From NCBI RefSeq assembly GCF_006345805.1, contig NW_021829996.1:1-5556 (forward strand): 5,556 nucleotides of DNA. The letters are read 5' to 3'. The DNA comes from Octopus sinensis. Its lineage: Eukaryota. The translations under genes and the position numbers were made by a program. The notes under the pieces were generated by a model. The model had not been told where the DNA came from. It worked only from the letters and a program-made list of their open reading frames with translations, and did no database searches. Of this stretch, positions 1 to 5,556 are shown one piece after another (position 1 is the stretch's first letter; every line of letters begins with the position of its first letter).

Positions 1-79
1 CATAAACTTATAGTTGTTTGATGAAACAGGCCCTCCGCAGGAGCTAGGTCGCGGTGAGCGAAGCGAGCTGCCGAGCTAG
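1..79 (+). mobile_element. Probable 3' terminus of a Helitron-like (rolling-circle) element; the rest lies upstream of the window
   Basis: GC-rich non-satellite segment ending CTAG (76-79), followed directly by T (80), where the satellite begins in register (TATATTATGAAATTT, normally preceded by GCGTAA, giving an A|T site). Subterminal imperfect hairpin 51-71 has a GCGAAGC core (58-64). An upstream CTCC-GCA-GGAG hairpin (33-43) is followed by another CTAG (44-47). Hairpin plus CTRR and A|T insertion are the established Helitron 3' signature. The 5' TC end is not visible. Confidence 0.55.
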
Positions 80-1478
80 TATATTATGAAATTTAGGGAC
101 GTCCGTGATATGAAATTATGGGGTACTTGAGATTATGTAAGTAATTGCGTAATTATTAGGAAATTTAGGGACGCCTTTGATATGAATATATGGGGAGTAC
201 TTGAGATTATGTAAGAAATTGCGAAATATATATGAAATTTAGGCACGGCACTGATAATAATTATGGAGAGTACTTGAGATTATGTAATAATTGCGTAATA
301 TATAATGAAATTTAGGCACGGCACTGATATGAATATATGGAGAGAGTCTTGAGATTATGTAATAAATTGCGTAATATATAATGAAATTTAGGCACGTCAT
401 GACATGAAATTATGGGGTACTTGAGATTATGTAAGTAATTGCGTAATATTTTAGGAAATTTAGGGACGTCCGTGATATGAATATATGGGAGTACTTGAGA
501 TTATGTAAGAAATTTATATATATAATGCAATTTAGGCACGGCACCGATATGAATATATGGGGAGTACTTGAGATTATGTAGGAATTGCGTATATATAATG
601 AAATTTAGGCACGGAACTGATATGACTATATTGGAGTCTTGAGATTATGTAAGAAAGTTGCGTAATATATAATGAAATTTAGGCACGTCATGATATGAAA
701 TTATGGGATATTTGAGATTATGTAAGAAATTGCGTAATATATTAGGAAATTTTAGGACGCATGTGATATGAATTATATGGGGAGTACTTGAGATTATGTA
801 AGTAATTGCATATAATTATGAATTTAGGACGCCTGTGATATGAATATATGGGGTCTTGTACTTATGTAAGAAATTGCGTAATATATTATTAAATTTAGGG
901 ACGTCCTGATATGAATATATGGGGTACTTGAGATTATGTAAGTAATTGCGTAATATATTATGAAATTTAGGGACGTCCCTGATATTAATATATGGGGTAC
1001 TTGAGATTATGTAATAAATTGCGTAATATATAATGAAATATAGGCGCGGCACTGATATGAATATATGGAGAGTACTTGAGAATATGTAATAAATTGCGTA
1101 ATATATTATGAAATTTAGAGACGTCCGTGATATGAAATTATGGGGTACTTGAGATTATGTAAGTAATTGCGTAATATATTATGAAATTTAGGGACGCATG
1201 TGATATGAATATATGGGGAGTACTTGAGATTATGTAAGAAATTGCGTAATATATAATGAAATTTAGGCACGTCAGTGATATGAAATTATAGGGTACTTGA
1301 GATTATGTATGAAATTGCGTAATATATTAGGAAATTTAGGGACGCATGTGATATGAATATATGGGGAGTACATGAGATTATGTAAGAAATTGCGTAATAT
1401 ATTATGAAATTTAGGGACGCCTGTGATATGAATATATGGGGAGTACTTGAGATTATGTAAGAAATTGCGTTATAAATA

Positions 1479-2443
1479 ATGAAATTTAGCCACGTCCGTG
1501 ATATGAAATTATGCGGTACTGAGATTATGTAAGTAATTGCGTAATATATTAGGAAATTTAGGGACGCCTGTGATATGAATATATGGGGAGTACTTGAGAT
1601 TATGTAAGAAATTGCGTAATATATTATGAAATTTAGGGACGTCCGTGATATGAAATTATGGGGTACTTGAGATTATGTAAGTAATTGCGTAATATATTAG
1701 GAAATTTAGGGACGCCTGTGATATGAATATATGGGGAGTACTTGAGATTATGTAAGAAATTGCGAAATATATAATGAAATTTAGGCACGGCACTGATATG
1801 AATATATGGAGAGTACTTGAGAATATGTAATAAATTGCGTAATATATAATGAAATTTAGGCACGGCACTGATATGAATATATGGAGAGTACTTGAGATTA
1901 TGTAAGAAATTGCGTAATATATTAGGAAATTTAGGTACGCCTGTGATATGAATATATGGGGAGTACTTGAGATTATGTAAGAAATTGCGTAATAAATAAT
2001 GAAATTTAGGCACGTCCGTGATATGAAATTATGGGGTACTGAGATTATGTAAGTAATTGCGTAATATATTAGGAAATTTAGGGACGCCTGTGATATGAAT
2101 ATATGGGGAGTACTTGAGATTATGTAAGAAATTGCGTAATATATTATGAAATTTAGGGACGTCCGTGATATGAAATTATGGGGTACTTGAGATTATGTAA
2201 GTAATTGCGTAATATATTAGGAAATTTAGGGACGCCTGTGATATGAATATATGGGGAGTACTTGAGATTATGTAAGAAATTGCGTAATATATAATGAAAT
2301 TTAGGCACGGCACTGATATGAATATATGGAGAGTACTTGAGATTATGTAATAAATTGCGTAATATATAATGAAATTTAGGCACGGCACTGATATGAATAT
2401 ATGGAGAGTACTTGAGATTATGTAATAAATTGCGTAATATATA
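1479..2443. repeat. 520-bp (7-monomer) higher-order duplication within the satellite
   Basis: The same order of monomer types recurs at a 520-bp offset. Rare variants are shared: the 1-bp deletion TACTGAG at 1517 and 2037, and the monomer end ATAAATA at 1472-1478 and 1992-1998. Confidence 0.85.
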
Positions 2444-3108
2444 ATGAAATTTAGGCACGTCAGTGACATGAAATTATGGGGTACTTGAGATTATGTAAGT
2501 AATTGCGTAATATATTAGGAAATTTAGGGACGTCCGTGATATGAATATATGGGGAGTACTTGAGATTATGTAAGAAATTGCGTAATATATAATGAAATTT
2601 AGGCACGGCACTGATATGAATATATGGGGAGTACTTGAGATTATGTAAGAAATTGCGTAATATATAATGAAATTTAGGCACGTCAGTGATATGAAATTAT
2701 GGGGTATTTGAGATTATGTAAGAAATTGCGTAATATATTAGGAAATTTAGGGACGCATGTGATATGAATATATGGGGAGTACTTGAGATTATGTAAGAAA
2801 TTGCGTAATATATTATGAAATTTAGGCACGTCCGTGATATGAAATTATGGGGTACTTGAGATTATGTAAGAAATTGCGTAATACATTAGGAAATTTAGGG
2901 ACGCATGTGATATGAATATATGGGGAGTACTTGAGATTATGTAAGAAATTGCGTAATATATAATGAAATTTAGGCACGTCACTGATATGAAATTATGGGG
3001 TACTTGAGATTATGTAAGAAATTGCGTAATATATTAGGAAATTTAGGGACGCATGTGATATGAAATTATGGGGTACTTGAGATTATGTAAGTAATTGCGT
3101 AATATATT

Positions 3109-4061
3109 ATGAAATTTAGGGACGCCTGTGATATGAATATATGGGGTACTTGAGATTATGTAAGAAATTGAGTAATATATTATGAAATTTAGGGACGTCC
3201 CTGATATGAATATATGGGGTACTTGAGATTATGTAAGTAATTGCGTAATATATTATGAAATTTAGGGACGTCCCTGATATGAATATATGGGGTACTTGAG
3301 ATTATGTAAGTAATTGCGTAATATATTATGAAATTTAGGGACGCATGTGATATGAATATATGGGGTACTTGAGATTATGTAAGTAATTGCGTAATATATT
3401 AGGAAATTTAGGTACGCCTGTGATATGAATATATGGGGAGTACTTGAGATTATGTAAGAAATTGCGTAATATATTATGAAATTTAGGGACGTCCGTGATA
3501 TGAAATTATGGGGTACTTGAGTTTATGTAAGTAATTGCGTAATATATTATGAAATTTAGGGACGTCCGTGATATGAATATATGGGGTACTTGAGATTATG
3601 TAAGAAATTGCGTAATATATTATGAAATTTAGGGACGTCCCTGATATGAATATATGGGGTACTTGAGATTATGTAAGTAATTGCGTAATATATTATGAAA
3701 TTTAGGGACGTCCCTGATATTAATATATGGGGTACTTGAGATTATGTAAGTAATTGCGTAATATATTATGAAATTTAGGGACGCATGTGATATGAATATA
3801 TGGGGTACTTGAGATTATGTAAGTAATTGCGTAATATATTAGGAAATTTAGGTACACCTGTGATATGAATATATGGGGAGTACTTGAGATTATGTAAGAA
3901 ATTGCGTAATATATTATGAAATTTAGGGACGTCCGTGATATGAAATTATGGGGTACTTGAGTTTATGTAAGTAATTGCGTAATATATTATGAAATTTAGG
4001 GACGCCTGTGATATGAATATATGGGGTACTTGAGATTATGTAAGAAATTGCGTAATATATT
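3109..4061. repeat. 440-bp (6-monomer; 5x73+75) higher-order repeat, about 2.2 copies
   Basis: Rare variants recur exactly 440 bp apart: GAGTTTATG (variant T at 3522 and 3962) and AGGTAC-type monomers starting at 3401 and 3841. The copies differ by about 4-5 substitutions, counted by eye. Confidence 0.9.
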
Positions 4062-4194
4062 ATGAAATTTAGGGACGTCCGTGATATGAAATTATGGGGT
4101 ACTTGAGATTATGTAAGTAATTGCGTAATATATTAGGAAATTTAGGGACGCCTGTGATATGAATATATGGGGAGTACTTGAGATTATGTAAGAA

Positions 4195-4206
4195 ATTGCG
4201 TAATAT
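4195..4206 (+). repeat. Target-site duplication, left copy (ATTGCGTAATAT; 11 bp if the final T belongs to the poly(A) tail)
   Basis: Identical to 5296-5307. Removing the insert and one copy restores a normal 75-bp monomer. Confidence 0.92.
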
Positions 4207-4216
4207 TTTTTTTTTT
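4206..4216 (-). other. Poly(A) tail (A11; one A is ambiguous with the TSD)
   Basis: Uninterrupted T11 on the + strand between the TSD and the 3' UTR. Confidence 0.9.
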
Positions 4217-4243
4217 GAAAATAAAACACAAAAAAAATGATTA
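4217..4243 (-). other. 27-nt U-rich 3' UTR of the retrotransposon
   Basis: Minus strand TAATCATTTTTTTTGTGTTTTATTTTC lies between the stop codon and the tail. There is no AATAAA on the element strand. Confidence 0.85.
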
Positions 4244-5293
4244 TCATAATCTTAAGCTGCTGATGATCGAGAAGACGTTGCCCCTCAGGATCGCAATGGA
4301 TATTCTTTGGAACAACCATTGCTTCTCCCGAGGCTCTCTCCGTCTTCTCGAGATCAGATTCCCGATTTTAACGACGAGTTCAAACGATTTTTGGCTCATG
4401 GCCCCGGAGGTTTCTACAGATATTGGGGAGAAGATAAAGTTGTCCAGCAGGTTGGAATATTTCTGACCTTTATGTACCTCAGCCTTCTCAGCGGCTGAGC
4501 CTGGACTGATCGCGGAGTCAACTATATTGGTCTTTGAGAAGGTGTCTGTGCACGTGGAGTCCCACGCGAGGCATTTCCCATTACTCCACGGGAAAATGGT
4601 GACTCCATCTGGGCGTTTACCGTCTCCACGGTCAAGCCCAACTGGTTCCAGTTCTGTCGGGAATCCAGCTGCTTGTAACGCAGCCGAAATAGTCTCGTTG
4701 ATAGCGGAGTGTCTGGGAGCACGGCCAGCACTCCTTCTGCATGACAGGGGATGTAGTCCTTTGGTATCGACTTTACTCCCACATCGGCATTGGCCCCCCG
4801 AACAGACATTAAGTCCCAAGCGCATTGCTACGCCAATCCTCACACAGTCATTATCGAGAAGGGTTCCAGATTGGGAGCAAGGGAGGGCATTAAGCCACGC
4901 TCCACTTTCAGGTCTGGCAGCGGCACCGAAACAAGCGAGGCGATGCTGATCCAATGTAGGTCTGATTGCTTCCATTTTAGCTTTGCTGGAGATATCATCC
5001 CATTCCCATTGGCGTGAAATGTTAGATGGAATGGCCAATCCAGATCCCTTCCAGAATTCGCAAGCTCCAGAGAAAACCCGGTCCTCTTCCAATCCGCGAG
5101 AGTTACGTAGGATTTGGGTGATGAGGGCTTGGGAGCTCGCACGTGAGGAAAGGAATGCAGGAAGAGCCATGTCCAGAGGTGAACGGAGTCCAACTCCGCC
5201 AAGGCGTAGAGGTAATTTGCAGCAAGTCCAACCAGCGTCATCAAAGGATATGTTTAGGATTTTTTCAGCGGCCAACTTCAGAGAAGTATCGAG
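4244..5293 (-). CDS. C-terminal fragment (349 aa) of an RLE non-LTR retrotransposon polyprotein: end of RT/thumb, CCHC zinc knuckle, restriction-like endonuclease
   Basis: The ORF-track start at 5275 is a TTG (Leu), and the frame continues as LDTSLK up to the junction, so there is no true start. Motifs: W..LPLRLGGVG (thumb), SGAWLNALP, CRCGSKVDTKGLHPLSC (CxCx9Hx3C), RHSAINE, EP, RPDG, WD, KGQKY, PISVETSG, QRISIAILRGN. Stop TGA at 4246-4244 is followed by TAA. No internal stops or frameshifts, but it lacks the RT core and cannot be autonomous. Confidence 0.9.
   Translation of the reverse strand, partial: LDTSLKLAAEKILNISFDDAGWTCCKLPLRLGGVGLRSPLDMALPAFLSSRASSQALITQILRNSRGLEEDRVFSGACEFWKGSGLAIPSNISRQWEWDDISSKAKMEAIRPTLDQHRLACFGAAARPESGAWLNALPCSQSGTLLDNDCVRIGVAMRLGLNVCSGGQCRCGSKVDTKGLHPLSCRRSAGRAPRHSAINETISAALQAAGFPTELEPVGLDRGDGKRPDGVTIFPWSNGKCLAWDSTCTDTFSKTNIVDSAISPGSAAEKAEVHKGQKYSNLLDNFIFSPISVETSGAMSQKSFELVVKIGNLISRRRREPREKQWLFQRISIAILRGNVFSIISSLRL
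4457..4714 (-). other. Restriction-like endonuclease (PD-(D/E)xK-type) domain core
   Basis: RH (188-189), E210, RPD (D223 at 4609-4607), D239, K269 and KY (272-273) occur in the order expected for the RLE domain of R2/R4/NeSL/CRE elements. Confidence 0.85.
4739..4789 (-). other. CCHC zinc knuckle (C163, C165, H175, C179 of the 343-aa track ORF)
   Basis: Translation CRCGSKVDTKGLHPLSC lies just upstream of the RH..E..RPD nuclease motifs, as in RLE-type elements. Confidence 0.85.
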
Positions 5294-5295
5294 CG

Positions 5296-5307
5296 ATTGC
5301 GTAATAT
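5296..5307 (+). repeat. Target-site duplication, right copy (ATTGCGTAATAT)
   Basis: Identical to 4195-4206; the satellite resumes in register. Confidence 0.92.
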
Positions 5308-5556
5308 ATTATGAAATTTAGGGACGTCCCTGATATGAATATATGGGGTACTTGAGATTATGTAAGTAATTGCGTAATATATTATGAAATTTAGGGACGT
5401 CCGTGATATGAAATTATGGGGTACTTGACATTATGTAAGTAATTGCGTAATATATTATGAAATTTAGGGACGTCCCTGATATGAATATATGGGGTACTTG
5501 AGATTATGTAAGAAATAGCGTAATATATAATGAAATTTAGGCACGTCAGTAATATG
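5296..5556. repeat. Continuation of the 73/75-bp satellite (monomers at 5311, 5384, 5457, partial at 5530)
   Basis: Same consensus and orientation as the left array; it runs off the end of the window. Confidence 0.97.

What the first reader, a model, noticed from the sequence alone, without database searches (positions are those of the whole stretch)
4195..5307. Young CRE-like RLE retrotransposon inserted precisely into a satellite monomer: candidate satellite-targeting element
Seen: an intact 1050-nt frame, a pure A11 tail, a perfect TSD and no target deletion, all suggesting a recent insertion. Established: many RLE-clade elements are sequence-specific for tandemly repeated targets, e.g. 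R2 and R4 (rDNA), CRE1/SLACS/CZAR and NeSL (spliced-leader genes), Utopia (U2 snRNA genes) and MoTeR (telomeric repeats). Inference: this family may use the 73/75-bp satellite as its renewable multicopy target, a specificity I do not recognise as described. Only one insertion is visible, so targeting is a hypothesis.
Basis: partly seen in the sequence, partly recalled or inferred. Interest (0 to 1): 0.78.

Follow-up and report, generated by a model that had tools for sequence, protein, structure and literature searches.

The report
Truncated endonuclease-bearing LINE inside a satellite repeat
A dead, front-truncated copy of a LINE retrotransposon that carries a restriction-like endonuclease sits cleanly inside one unit of a 73/75-bp satellite; the insertion is real but ordinary, and nothing available shows that the element aims at the satellite.

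Summary
A 1,089-bp GC-rich block (4207-5295, minus strand) interrupts a 73/75-bp satellite. It has a 10-11 nt poly(A) tail and a 349-codon open frame. A perfect 12-bp duplication (ATTGCGTAATAT) flanks it, and no target bases were lost.

The frame is the C-terminal linker, CCHC knuckle and restriction-like endonuclease (RLE) of a non-LTR retrotransposon. Its AlphaFold model (pLDDT 94) matches only R2 proteins in the PDB (E about 1e-8), and the catalytic motifs are intact. The reverse transcriptase is missing, so the copy was dead on arrival.

Relatives number more than 10,000 clusters, mostly animal. They are about 950-1,000 aa, often with an N-terminal PHD finger. The closest is only 57% identical (Octopus sinensis).

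The label "CRE-like" could not be tested. Satellite targeting rests on one insertion. No other copy of this family could be found in any collection.

Nine 3' junctions of the nearest relatives lie outside tandem arrays, and the seven with a readable poly(A) boundary have unrelated flanks. That argues for a dispersed, HERO-like habit.

One weak hint favours targeting. Bases 1-79 may be a second truncated copy that abuts the same 12-bp site (p about 0.02).

Verdict: a new member of a known kind, of modest interest.

The parts
80..4206 (.). Satellite array, left of the insertion. Monomers are 73 or 75 bp and partly form a 148-bp dimer repeat.
   Evidence: TRF finds period 73 with 56 copies and 88% matches, and also period 148.
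4195..4206 (.). Left copy of the 12-bp target-site duplication ATTGCGTAATAT. T4206 may instead be the last base of the tail.
   Evidence: Exact 12-mer match to 5296-5307. The same 12-mer occurs exactly in 46 of the 61 sites found with at most 3 substitutions.
4207..4216 (-). Poly(A) tail of the element, read as a T run on the + strand. It is 10 nt, or 11 with T4206.
   Evidence: It is the only T run of 8 or more in the window.
4217..4243 (-). A 27-nt 3' UTR, including a second in-frame stop (TAA, 4241-4243).
   Evidence: Sequence and translation.
4244..5293 (-). Open frame of 349 codons plus TGA. It is the C-terminal part (linker, CCHC knuckle, RLE) of a non-LTR retrotransposon protein. The reverse transcriptase and N-terminus are missing.
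   Evidence: Translation. 425 homologues, some with RVT_1 upstream. AF2 model pLDDT 94. The Foldseek top 7 are all R2 proteins, E 2.5e-8 to 8e-7, TMq 0.60-0.63.
4739..4789 (-). CCHC zinc knuckle: C169-x-C171-x9-H181-x3-C185.
   Evidence: These columns are invariant or nearly invariant in 49 relatives. They align with the R2Bm knuckle at 934-951.
4457..4714 (-). RLE catalytic core: R194-H195, E216-P217, R227-P228-D229, D245-x-T247, E272, K275.
   Evidence: D229 aligns with the D of the R2Bm KPD motif, residue 996. WD-x-T aligns with the VVDVT of turtle R2. All these residues are conserved in relatives.
5294..5295 (-). The first two bases of the truncated element, which mark the 5' truncation point.
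   Evidence: Satellite homology resumes at 5296.
5296..5307 (.). Right copy of the 12-bp target-site duplication.
5296..5556 (.). Satellite array, right of the insertion.
   Evidence: TRF finds period 73, 3.5 copies, 93% matches.
1..79 (-). GC-rich (0.55) non-satellite fragment at the window edge. It may be the 5' end of a second, more deeply truncated RLE-LINE copy. Its junction with the satellite falls between 75|76 and 79|80, inside the same 12-bp target. This is weak evidence.
   Evidence: The minus-strand frame LGSSLRSPRPSSCGGPVSSNNY resembles the family motif LGxxxCxPHxCxCGxxVD (blastx E 0.01 against 357 relatives). The HMM score is 0.9 bits, reached by 48 of 2,000 dinucleotide shuffles.

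Best explanation
The block is a 5'-truncated, dead-on-arrival copy of a poly(A)-tailed non-LTR retrotransposon of the RLE type. The family is a large, mostly animal clade built as PHD (or another DNA/chromatin-binding module), reverse transcriptase, CCHC knuckle, RLE.

Inferred mechanism: target-primed reverse transcription.
- The element's endonuclease nicked the window's + strand at 5'-GCGTAATAT^ATTATG-3'.
- The freed 3' end primed cDNA synthesis on the poly(A) tail of a full-length transcript.
- Copying stopped after about 1.08 kb, before the reverse-transcriptase region.
- The other strand was cut 12 bp away, and fill-in produced the ATTGCGTAATAT duplication.

The copy cannot move by itself. 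Its frame is open because it is young.

Its presence in the satellite most likely reflects non-specific, or at most AT-biased, insertion by an abundant dispersed family, combined with the tolerance of satellite arrays for insertions. It probably does not reflect recognition of the monomer.

Shown: the anatomy, the fold and the motifs. Inferred: the order of events, and the absence of targeting.
For: Identity:
- The AF2 model (pLDDT 94) matches only R2 retrotransposon proteins of silkworm, zebra finch and turtle (E 2.5e-8 to 8e-7, TMq about 0.6).
- A profile of 49 relatives aligns the CCHC knuckle, RH, E-P and KPD of R2Bm 933-996.
- A profile of 35 full-length relatives hits R2 at E 4e-24 and L1 ORF2p at 4e-10.
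- Pfam finds RVT_1 in 35 of 35 and PHD in 14 of 35, and lists no apurinic-type endonuclease.

Insertion hallmarks: tail, 12-bp duplication, restored monomer spacing and restored dimer sequence.

Dispersed habit of relatives:
- The window groups with Octopus sinensis P0062 inside a well-supported clade with PHD-bearing members.
- Nine 3' junctions of that clade, from octopus scaffolds, long ENA contigs and metagenome contigs, have no tandem array within 1.5 kb.
- Where a poly(A) boundary is readable, tails are A8 to A35 and the flanks are unrelated: TTAAAAAAATAG, GAATAGATATC, CCATGGAATTT, GTATGTTTCC, TAATAATTGAA.
- Octopus loci hold 2-3 copies per 10 kb. R2-superfamily LINEs are reported as unusually abundant in that genome (PMC10294476).

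Literature: HERO, one of the five RLE clades, 'contains many non-specific retrotransposons' (PMC4640811). LINEs make up about 1.3% of centromeric satellite arrays across 325 genomes (bioRxiv 10.64898/2026.09.17.752431).
Against: - Four of the five RLE clades are mostly target-specific (PMC4640811), so the prior for specificity is not small.
- The cut lies in one of the best-conserved stretches of the monomer, and the insertion is exact.
- The fragment at 1-79 may be a second, independently truncated copy in the same orientation. Its 5' junction falls inside the same 12-bp site. By my own estimate, such a placement has a chance of about 0.09 if the fragment is a LINE at all.
- The relatives examined are at most 57% identical. 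Target choice changes quickly among RLE lineages, so their behaviour may not transfer.
- The satellite's share of the host genome is unknown.
Confidence: 0.6

Rival explanations
1. Sequence-specific targeting. The family's DNA-binding module and RLE recognise the monomer around ATTGCGTAATAT and use the array as a renewable multicopy target, as R2 uses 28S rDNA or CRE uses spliced-leader genes.
For: RLE clades are mostly site-specific (PMC4640811). The insertion is exact, with no target loss. The target 12-mer is present exactly in 46 monomers and lies in a highly conserved stretch. A possible second truncated copy in the same orientation has its junction inside the same 12 bp. YURE elements of Ciona are a precedent for an RLE LINE that enters a satellite (PMC4640811).
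Against: There is one certain insertion in about 4.4 kb of array holding 46 exact targets. The second 'copy' rests on a 20-residue match with p about 0.02. The nearest relatives are dispersed with unrelated flanks. The satellite is not derived from any recognisable RNA gene, unlike most RLE targets. No other copy of the family could be found to test the idea.
Confidence: 0.18
2. Chromatin-guided ('centrophilic') insertion. The N-terminal PHD finger of the full-length protein reads a histone mark typical of the satellite's chromatin and steers integration into the array, without strict sequence recognition. The exact cut site is then chosen by a loose AT-rich preference.
For: PHD fingers occur in 14 of 35 full-length relatives, including the closest ones (P0270, P0271, the L002 ORF). 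The profile also matches PHF2 PHD structures. Diverse transposon classes, LINEs included, have adapted to satellite centromeres (bioRxiv 10.64898/2026.09.17.752431). The nicked sequence TAATAT^ATTAT is AT-rich.
Against: The PHD matches are mostly below Pfam's cut-off. This copy lacks its N-terminus, so whether this family has a PHD finger is unknown. PHD-bearing relatives in octopus lie outside tandem arrays. No histone-binding specificity can be inferred from sequence.
Confidence: 0.1
3. The block is not a primary insertion at this spot. It would be one copy of a satellite-plus-insertion unit spread by unequal exchange or segmental duplication within the array, or an assembly artefact.
For: Copies with identical duplications inside satellite arrays have been traced to single integrations copied by host recombination, for example 11 LINE copies in Porphyrio hochstetteri (bioRxiv 10.64898/2026.09.17.752431).
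Against: Only one copy is visible in 5.5 kb. The junctions are base-exact, with tail and duplication, which a misassembly would not produce. Even if the unit was copied later, an original retrotransposition is still required.
Confidence: 0.05

Closest known systems
R2 retrotransposon protein (Bombyx mori R2Bm, zebra finch R2Tg, turtle R2; PDB 8gh6, 9dou, 9nl2, 9nl3, 8ibw-z)
   Same: It is the only solved fold that matches. The linker, CCHC knuckle and PD-(D/E)-type RLE superpose over about 380 columns. The C..C..H..C, RH, E-P, KPD and D-x-T motifs align. The reverse transcriptase of full-length relatives is closest to that of R2 (E 4e-24).
   Different: Identity is only 14-17%. [quoted passage not shown] This element has a poly(A) tail and a 12-bp duplication. 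From my own knowledge, R2 has a defined non-poly(A) 3' end and a small deletion at the 28S site. There is no rDNA here.
HERO clade (R2-Hero) of RLE non-LTR retrotransposons
   Same: Both are single-ORF RT+RLE elements of animals, and many HERO families are non-specific (PMC4640811). HERO is reported in cephalopods and bivalves (PMC10294476). The dispersed flanks of the relatives fit this habit.
   Different: Membership could not be tested because no HERO reference sequence was available. An N-terminal PHD finger on a HERO element is not described in the papers I could read.
CRE clade (CRE1, CRE2, SLACS, CZAR; MoTeR)
   Same: Both have RT + RLE, a poly(A) tail, duplications of variable size and a tandemly repeated target (PMC12278014).
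   Different: CRE elements insert at one position of spliced-leader RNA genes and carry one or two zinc-finger-like motifs. Here the target is an anonymous AT-rich satellite with no Rfam match, and the closest full-length relatives carry PHD fingers. The RT phylogeny was not testable.
R4/Dong clade
   Same: Both are RT + RLE elements of animals with AT-rich repeated targets. Dong inserts into (TAA)n (PMC7998251). More distant relatives of the window's protein (38-40% identity, L011-L015) have (TAA)n or (TTA)n tracts within a few bases to about 25 nt of their 3' ends.
   Different: Those (TAA)n-flanked relatives form a separate, well-supported clade. R4/Dong has no N-terminal zinc fingers (PMC7998251), whereas this clade does. 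The window's target is not a (TAA)n tract.
YURE / Utopia (NeSL clade)
   Same: This is the published precedent for an RLE LINE entering a satellite. [quoted passage not shown]
   Different: That satellite derives from a small-RNA gene, and the specificity is inherited from U2 targeting. The satellite here has no detectable RNA-gene origin.

Membership tests
RLE-type non-LTR retrotransposon (R2/CRE supergroup) | C-terminal CCHC zinc knuckle followed by a PD-(D/E)-type restriction-like endonuclease | tested here: met
   C169, C171, H181, C185, RH194-195, E216, RPD227-229 and D245-x-T247 are all present. They align with R2Bm 933-996. The fold matches only R2 proteins, E 2.5e-8.
RLE-type non-LTR retrotransposon (R2/CRE supergroup) | Reverse transcriptase upstream in the same ORF, with no apurinic-type endonuclease | tested here: met
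   The RT is absent from this truncated copy. In full-length relatives RVT_1 is found in 35 of 35, and Pfam lists no Exo_endo_phos family. The RT profile is closest to R2.
RLE-type non-LTR retrotransposon (R2/CRE supergroup) | Hallmarks of target-primed reverse transcription: 3' tail, 5' truncation, target-site duplication | tested here: met
   A10-11 tail, 12-bp duplication, truncation before the RT, and an exact empty site.
CRE clade | RT groups with CRE1/CRE2/SLACS/CZAR in a phylogeny | not testable with these tools
   This copy has no RT, and no CRE reference sequence could be obtained.
CRE clade | Insertion at a fixed position of spliced-leader RNA genes (or telomeric repeats for MoTeR) | tested here: not met
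   No Rfam family matches at E<=1 anywhere in the window, and there is no tRNA. The target is a 73/75-bp AT-rich satellite.
CRE clade | One or two zinc-finger-like motifs (PMC12278014) | tested here: inconclusive
   The N-terminus is missing here. The nearest full-length relatives have PHD-type fingers, and some more distant ones have C2H2-like motifs.
HERO clade | RT groups with HERO references | not testable with these tools
   No reference sequences were available.
HERO clade | Mostly non-specific, dispersed insertion | tested here: inconclusive
   Relatives at 50-57% identity are dispersed with unrelated flanks. The window's own family has only one visible copy.
R4/Dong clade | Insertion into (TAA)n or 28S rDNA, and no N-terminal zinc finger | tested here: not met
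   The target is not a (TAA)n tract. The (TAA)n-flanked relatives L011-L015 form a separate, well-supported clade. The window's clade has PHD-bearing members.
R2 clade proper | 28S rDNA target, with N-terminal zinc fingers plus a Myb domain | tested here: not met
   There is no rRNA match. Pfam finds no Myb domain in 35 full-length relatives. Identity to R2 is 14-17%.
Satellite-specific (site-specific) retrotransposon | Many independent insertions at the same position of the repeat unit | not testable with these tools
   There is one certain insertion. No other copy above 57% identity exists in 5.8 billion protein clusters, 1.84 billion representatives, JGI metagenomes, IMG/VR or GTDB genomes. 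A possible second copy at 1-79 is only weakly supported.

The most novel reading that the evidence does not exclude
The family is a truly satellite-directed RLE LINE. Its full-length protein would recognise the monomer around ATTGCGTAATAT, or the array's chromatin through a PHD finger, and nick at TAATAT^ATTAT with a 12-bp stagger. The array would then serve as its renewable landing pad. The fragment at 1-79 would be a second independent hit on the same site.
Probability: 0.2. Interest if true: 0.6.

Novelty: new member of a known kind. Interest (0 to 1): 0.33.

Why it matters
As it stands, this is a routine annotation: a young, dead copy of an abundant animal LINE clade lying in a satellite.

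If the family did prove to aim at this monomer, three things would follow:
- It would add an anonymous satellite, not derived from an RNA gene, to the target list of RLE elements.
- It would give a natural case of a LINE adapted to a satellite niche.
- It would offer a new RLE and DNA-binding pair with a defined cut site, of the kind now sought for programmable insertion tools based on R2.

The clade itself deserves a proper description. It has more than 10,000 clusters and swaps N-terminal PHD, RFX and C2H2-like modules and OTU or USP protease domains.

Tried and rejected
Searches for other copies of the same family all failed.
- Word-indexed protein search with the fragment.
- The same search with a chimera that lifts the length filter so that full-length proteins could be found.
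- Exhaustive HMMER search of 1.84 billion representatives. In all three, the best identity was 54-58%.
- Back-translated scans of IMG/VR and JGI metagenomes with the single protein.

Searches for the satellite also failed: two patterns in GTDB genomes, one in IMG/VR, and six k-mers in the full text of papers. The host therefore remains unidentified.

Direct hits with the fragment alone were absent in Pfam and in PDB sequence search. Only profiles and the predicted fold gave answers.

An RNA-gene origin of the satellite was rejected. This had been suggested by analogy with U2_sat, 5S or spliced-leader targets. There is no Rfam match at E<=1 and no tRNA.

A Helitron 3' end was considered for bases 1-79, which end in CTAGT. 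It was rejected because there is no significant hairpin (fold z -1.0).

R4/Dong membership was considered because distant relatives have (TAA)n near their 3' ends. It was rejected because they form a separate clade and the N-terminal architecture differs (PMC7998251).

A search for duplications flanking three relatives (L004, L008, L010) found none of 9 bp or more. The typical duplication length of the clade is therefore unknown.

Clade naming against CRE, HERO or NeSL references failed. The supplements of the Utopia and trypanosomatid papers showed no protein alignment or sequence file.
Full report
What is in the window.
Bases 80-4206 and 5296-5556 are a tandem array of 73- and 75-bp monomers, partly organised as a 148-bp dimer (TRF; spacings). 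Its GC content is 0.31. A 1,089-bp block with GC 0.50 interrupts it at 4207-5295. Bases 1-79 are also non-satellite (GC 0.55).

Check of the observation.
- Read on the minus strand, the block ends in a run of 10-11 A. This is T11 at 4206-4216, the only long T run in the window. The first T is shared with the target.
- It has a 27-nt 3' UTR and an open frame of 349 codons from 5293 to 4247. TGA and then TAA follow.
- ATTGCGTAATAT flanks the block on both sides (4195-4206 and 5296-5307), 12 of 12 identical.
- The anchor spacing across the block is 1,174 bp. Subtracting the 1,089-bp block and one 12-bp duplicate leaves 73 bp, exactly one monomer.
- With the block and one duplicate removed, the 60-mer across the site recurs exactly at 3589 and at 12 further places with at most two mismatches. 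The two-monomer 146-mer recurs with three mismatches at 1550 and 2070.

One caveat: in a tandem array a 12-bp overlap cannot be formally told apart from a 61-bp loss.

What the block encodes.
The fragment alone has no Pfam or PDB sequence match. It does have 425 homologues in the word-indexed protein search and 10,825 clusters at E<=0.001 in the exhaustive search. Many of these carry a reverse-transcriptase domain upstream. Full-length relatives are about 915-1,000 aa.

An AlphaFold model built on 49 relatives is confident (mean pLDDT 94, pTM 0.90). Its only significant structural neighbours are R2 retrotransposon proteins of silkworm, zebra finch and a turtle (E 2.5e-8 to 8e-7, TMq 0.60-0.63 over about 380 columns). 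The next hits are scattered PD-(D/E)xK nucleases with E>0.1.

A profile of the 49 relatives aligns the knuckle and nuclease motifs of R2Bm 933-996. The window's D229 falls on the D of KPD, residue 996. The turtle R2 alignment pairs WD-x-T with VVDVT. The motifs in the window copy are C169-x-C171-x9-H181-x3-C185, R194-H195, E216-P217, R227-P228-D229, D245-x-T247, E272 and K275. All lie in invariant or nearly invariant columns.

A profile of 35 full-length relatives hits R2 proteins at E 4e-24 and L1 ORF2p at 4e-10. Pfam finds RVT_1 in 35 of 35, PHD fingers in 14, an RFX DNA-binding domain in 2, and no apurinic-type endonuclease.

The block is thus the C-terminal third of an RLE-type non-LTR retrotransposon protein: linker, CCHC knuckle and restriction-like endonuclease. 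It lacks the reverse transcriptase and N-terminus, so it was dead on arrival.

It keeps 56 of the 61 columns that are at least 90% conserved in relatives. Together with the open frame, the pure tail and the perfect duplication, this points to a recent insertion. No date can be given without other copies.

Which clade.
In a tree of the C-terminal domain (58 rows) the window groups with Octopus sinensis P0062 (57% identity, SH-aLRT 88). Both lie inside a well-supported 28-row clade. That clade contains other octopus copies, PHD-bearing full-length proteins (P0270 and P0271 at 50-51% identity; the L002 ORF) and a branch with a C-terminal ubiquitin-hydrolase domain.

Relatives at 38-40% identity from metagenome contigs (L011-L015) have (TAA)n or (TTA)n tracts near their 3' ends. 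This is the habit described for Dong (PMC7998251). They form a separate, well-supported clade.

R4/Dong elements are also described as lacking N-terminal zinc fingers (PMC7998251). The window's element is therefore not Dong-like.

CRE elements are defined by insertion at one position of spliced-leader genes, with RT, RLE, a poly(A) tail, one or two zinc-finger-like motifs and variable duplications (PMC12278014). The general anatomy fits. The target does not: there is no Rfam match at E<=1 and no tRNA.

No CRE, HERO or NeSL reference sequences could be obtained, so the label 'CRE-like' remains untested. The dispersed habit of the relatives resembles HERO, which 'contains many non-specific retrotransposons' (PMC4640811).

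Does it aim at the satellite?
The direct test needs other copies of the same family, and none could be found.
- The best identity anywhere is 54-58%.
- Scans of JGI metagenomes and IMG/VR with the protein found nothing.
- The satellite itself is absent from GTDB genomes, from IMG/VR and from the full text of papers.

Indirect evidence comes from the nearest relatives.
- Nine 3' junctions have no tandem array within 1.5 kb. They come from four octopus scaffolds, two long ENA contigs and three metagenome contigs.
- Where the boundary is readable, the elements end in A8 to A35 tails followed by unrelated sequences: TTAAAAAAATAG, TTAAAAACAAAT, GAATAGATATC, CCATGGAATTT, GTATGTTTCC, TAATAATTGAA.
- Octopus loci hold two or three related copies per 10 kb. 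This agrees with the reported abundance of R2-superfamily LINEs in that genome (PMC10294476).

The nearest known relatives are thus abundant, dispersed and without a shared target.

Within the window, 46 monomers carry the exact 12-mer and one is occupied. The cut lies in a well-conserved stretch of the monomer. That is compatible with targeting but does not show it.

A lead in favour of targeting.
The minus strand of bases 1-79 translates as LGSSLRSPRPSSCGGPVSSNNY. This resembles the family's LGxxxCxPHxCxCGxxVD at the start of the knuckle (blastx E 0.01 against 357 relatives). The profile score is only 0.9 bits, and 48 of 2,000 dinucleotide shuffles reach it.

If it is a second copy, three things follow:
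- It is truncated about 158 codons further in, so it is an independent insertion.
- It has the same orientation as the first copy.
- Its junction with the satellite lies inside the same 12-bp site: the satellite resumes at TA[G]TATATTATG, between 75|76 and 79|80.

By my own estimate such a placement has a chance of about 0.09. This is a hint and no more. In a genome as full of these elements as the octopus, two copies in 5.5 kb would not be unusual.

Mechanism (inferred from established knowledge of target-primed reverse transcription in R2-like elements).
- The nick fell on the window's + strand at 5'-GCGTAATAT^ATTATG-3'.
- cDNA synthesis was primed on the poly(A) tail.
- Copying stopped after about 1.08 kb.
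- The second strand was cut 12 bp away, and fill-in made the duplication.
- The protein came from a full-length master copy elsewhere in the genome.

Known context.
A satellite as an RLE-LINE target is not without precedent. YURE elements of Ciona are occasionally inserted into a U2-derived satellite (PMC4640811). LINEs make up about 1.3% of centromeric satellite arrays across 325 genomes (bioRxiv 10.64898/2026.09.17.752431). The same preprint shows that many copies with identical duplications can descend from a single insertion copied by recombination.

Verdict.
'CRE-like' is untested, and satellite targeting is unsupported beyond a single insertion and one weak hint.

My estimates are:
- about 0.6 that the location is opportunistic;
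- about 0.2 that the family is sequence-specific for the monomer;
- about 0.1 that it is steered by chromatin.

It is a new member of a known kind. Interest is about 0.33, rising to about 0.6 if targeting were shown.

Noticed in passing
window 1-79: A GC-rich (0.55) non-satellite fragment lies at the window edge. Its minus-strand frame weakly resembles the start of the family's CCHC knuckle (blastx E 0.01; 48 of 2,000 shuffles score as well). Its junction with the satellite lies inside the same 12-bp target as the main insertion. It is possibly a second, independently truncated copy. A Helitron end was considered and not supported (no hairpin).
   Followed up: partly
window 80-4206: The satellite alternates 73-bp and 75-bp monomer variants, giving a 148-bp dimer repeat over much of the array. 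The leftmost ~900 bp are more irregular: spacings of 71-76 bp, one 140-bp gap, and a monomer near 510-520 that lacks the GCGTAAT core. The + strand is strongly G-over-C skewed (about 0.55). No RNA-gene origin was detectable.
   Followed up: partly
window 4195-4204: The first ten bases of the target, ATTGC/GTAAT, form an imperfect palindrome (4 of 5 pairs, read directly from the sequence). Its centre is one base off the midpoint of the two inferred nicks. This may be chance.
   Followed up: no
relatives P0296, P0132, P0144, P0303 (C-terminal UCH/USP); P0352, P0212 (OTU); P0166 (PHD + RFX): Members of this LINE clade have picked up varied accessory domains: ubiquitin hydrolase (USP), OTU protease, an RFX DNA-binding domain, and BED or C2H2-like fingers. 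One barnacle copy is named in NCBI as the host protein 'Ubiquitin carboxyl-terminal hydrolase 2', which is probably a misannotated transposon ORF.
   Followed up: partly
L011-L015 (metagenome contigs), 3' ends: A sister clade at 38-40% identity has (TAA)n or (TTA)n tracts near its 3' ends. L014 and L015 share a 3' UTR and then diverge into different TAA-rich flanks. This is the microsatellite habit known for Dong/R4.
   Followed up: partly
L007, L008, L016 (Octopus sinensis GCA_006345805.1): Each ~10-kb locus holds two or three related RLE-LINE copies in both orientations, some interrupted. One lies beside an innexin gene. L008 holds two copies of one family whose tails are both followed by TTAAAAA.
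   Followed up: partly
L002 4087-7044: A near full-length relative (51% identity) has a PHD finger, a reverse transcriptase and an RLE split by one frame break. An unrelated LINE with an apurinic-type endonuclease follows directly, so this is a nested transposon region.
   Followed up: no
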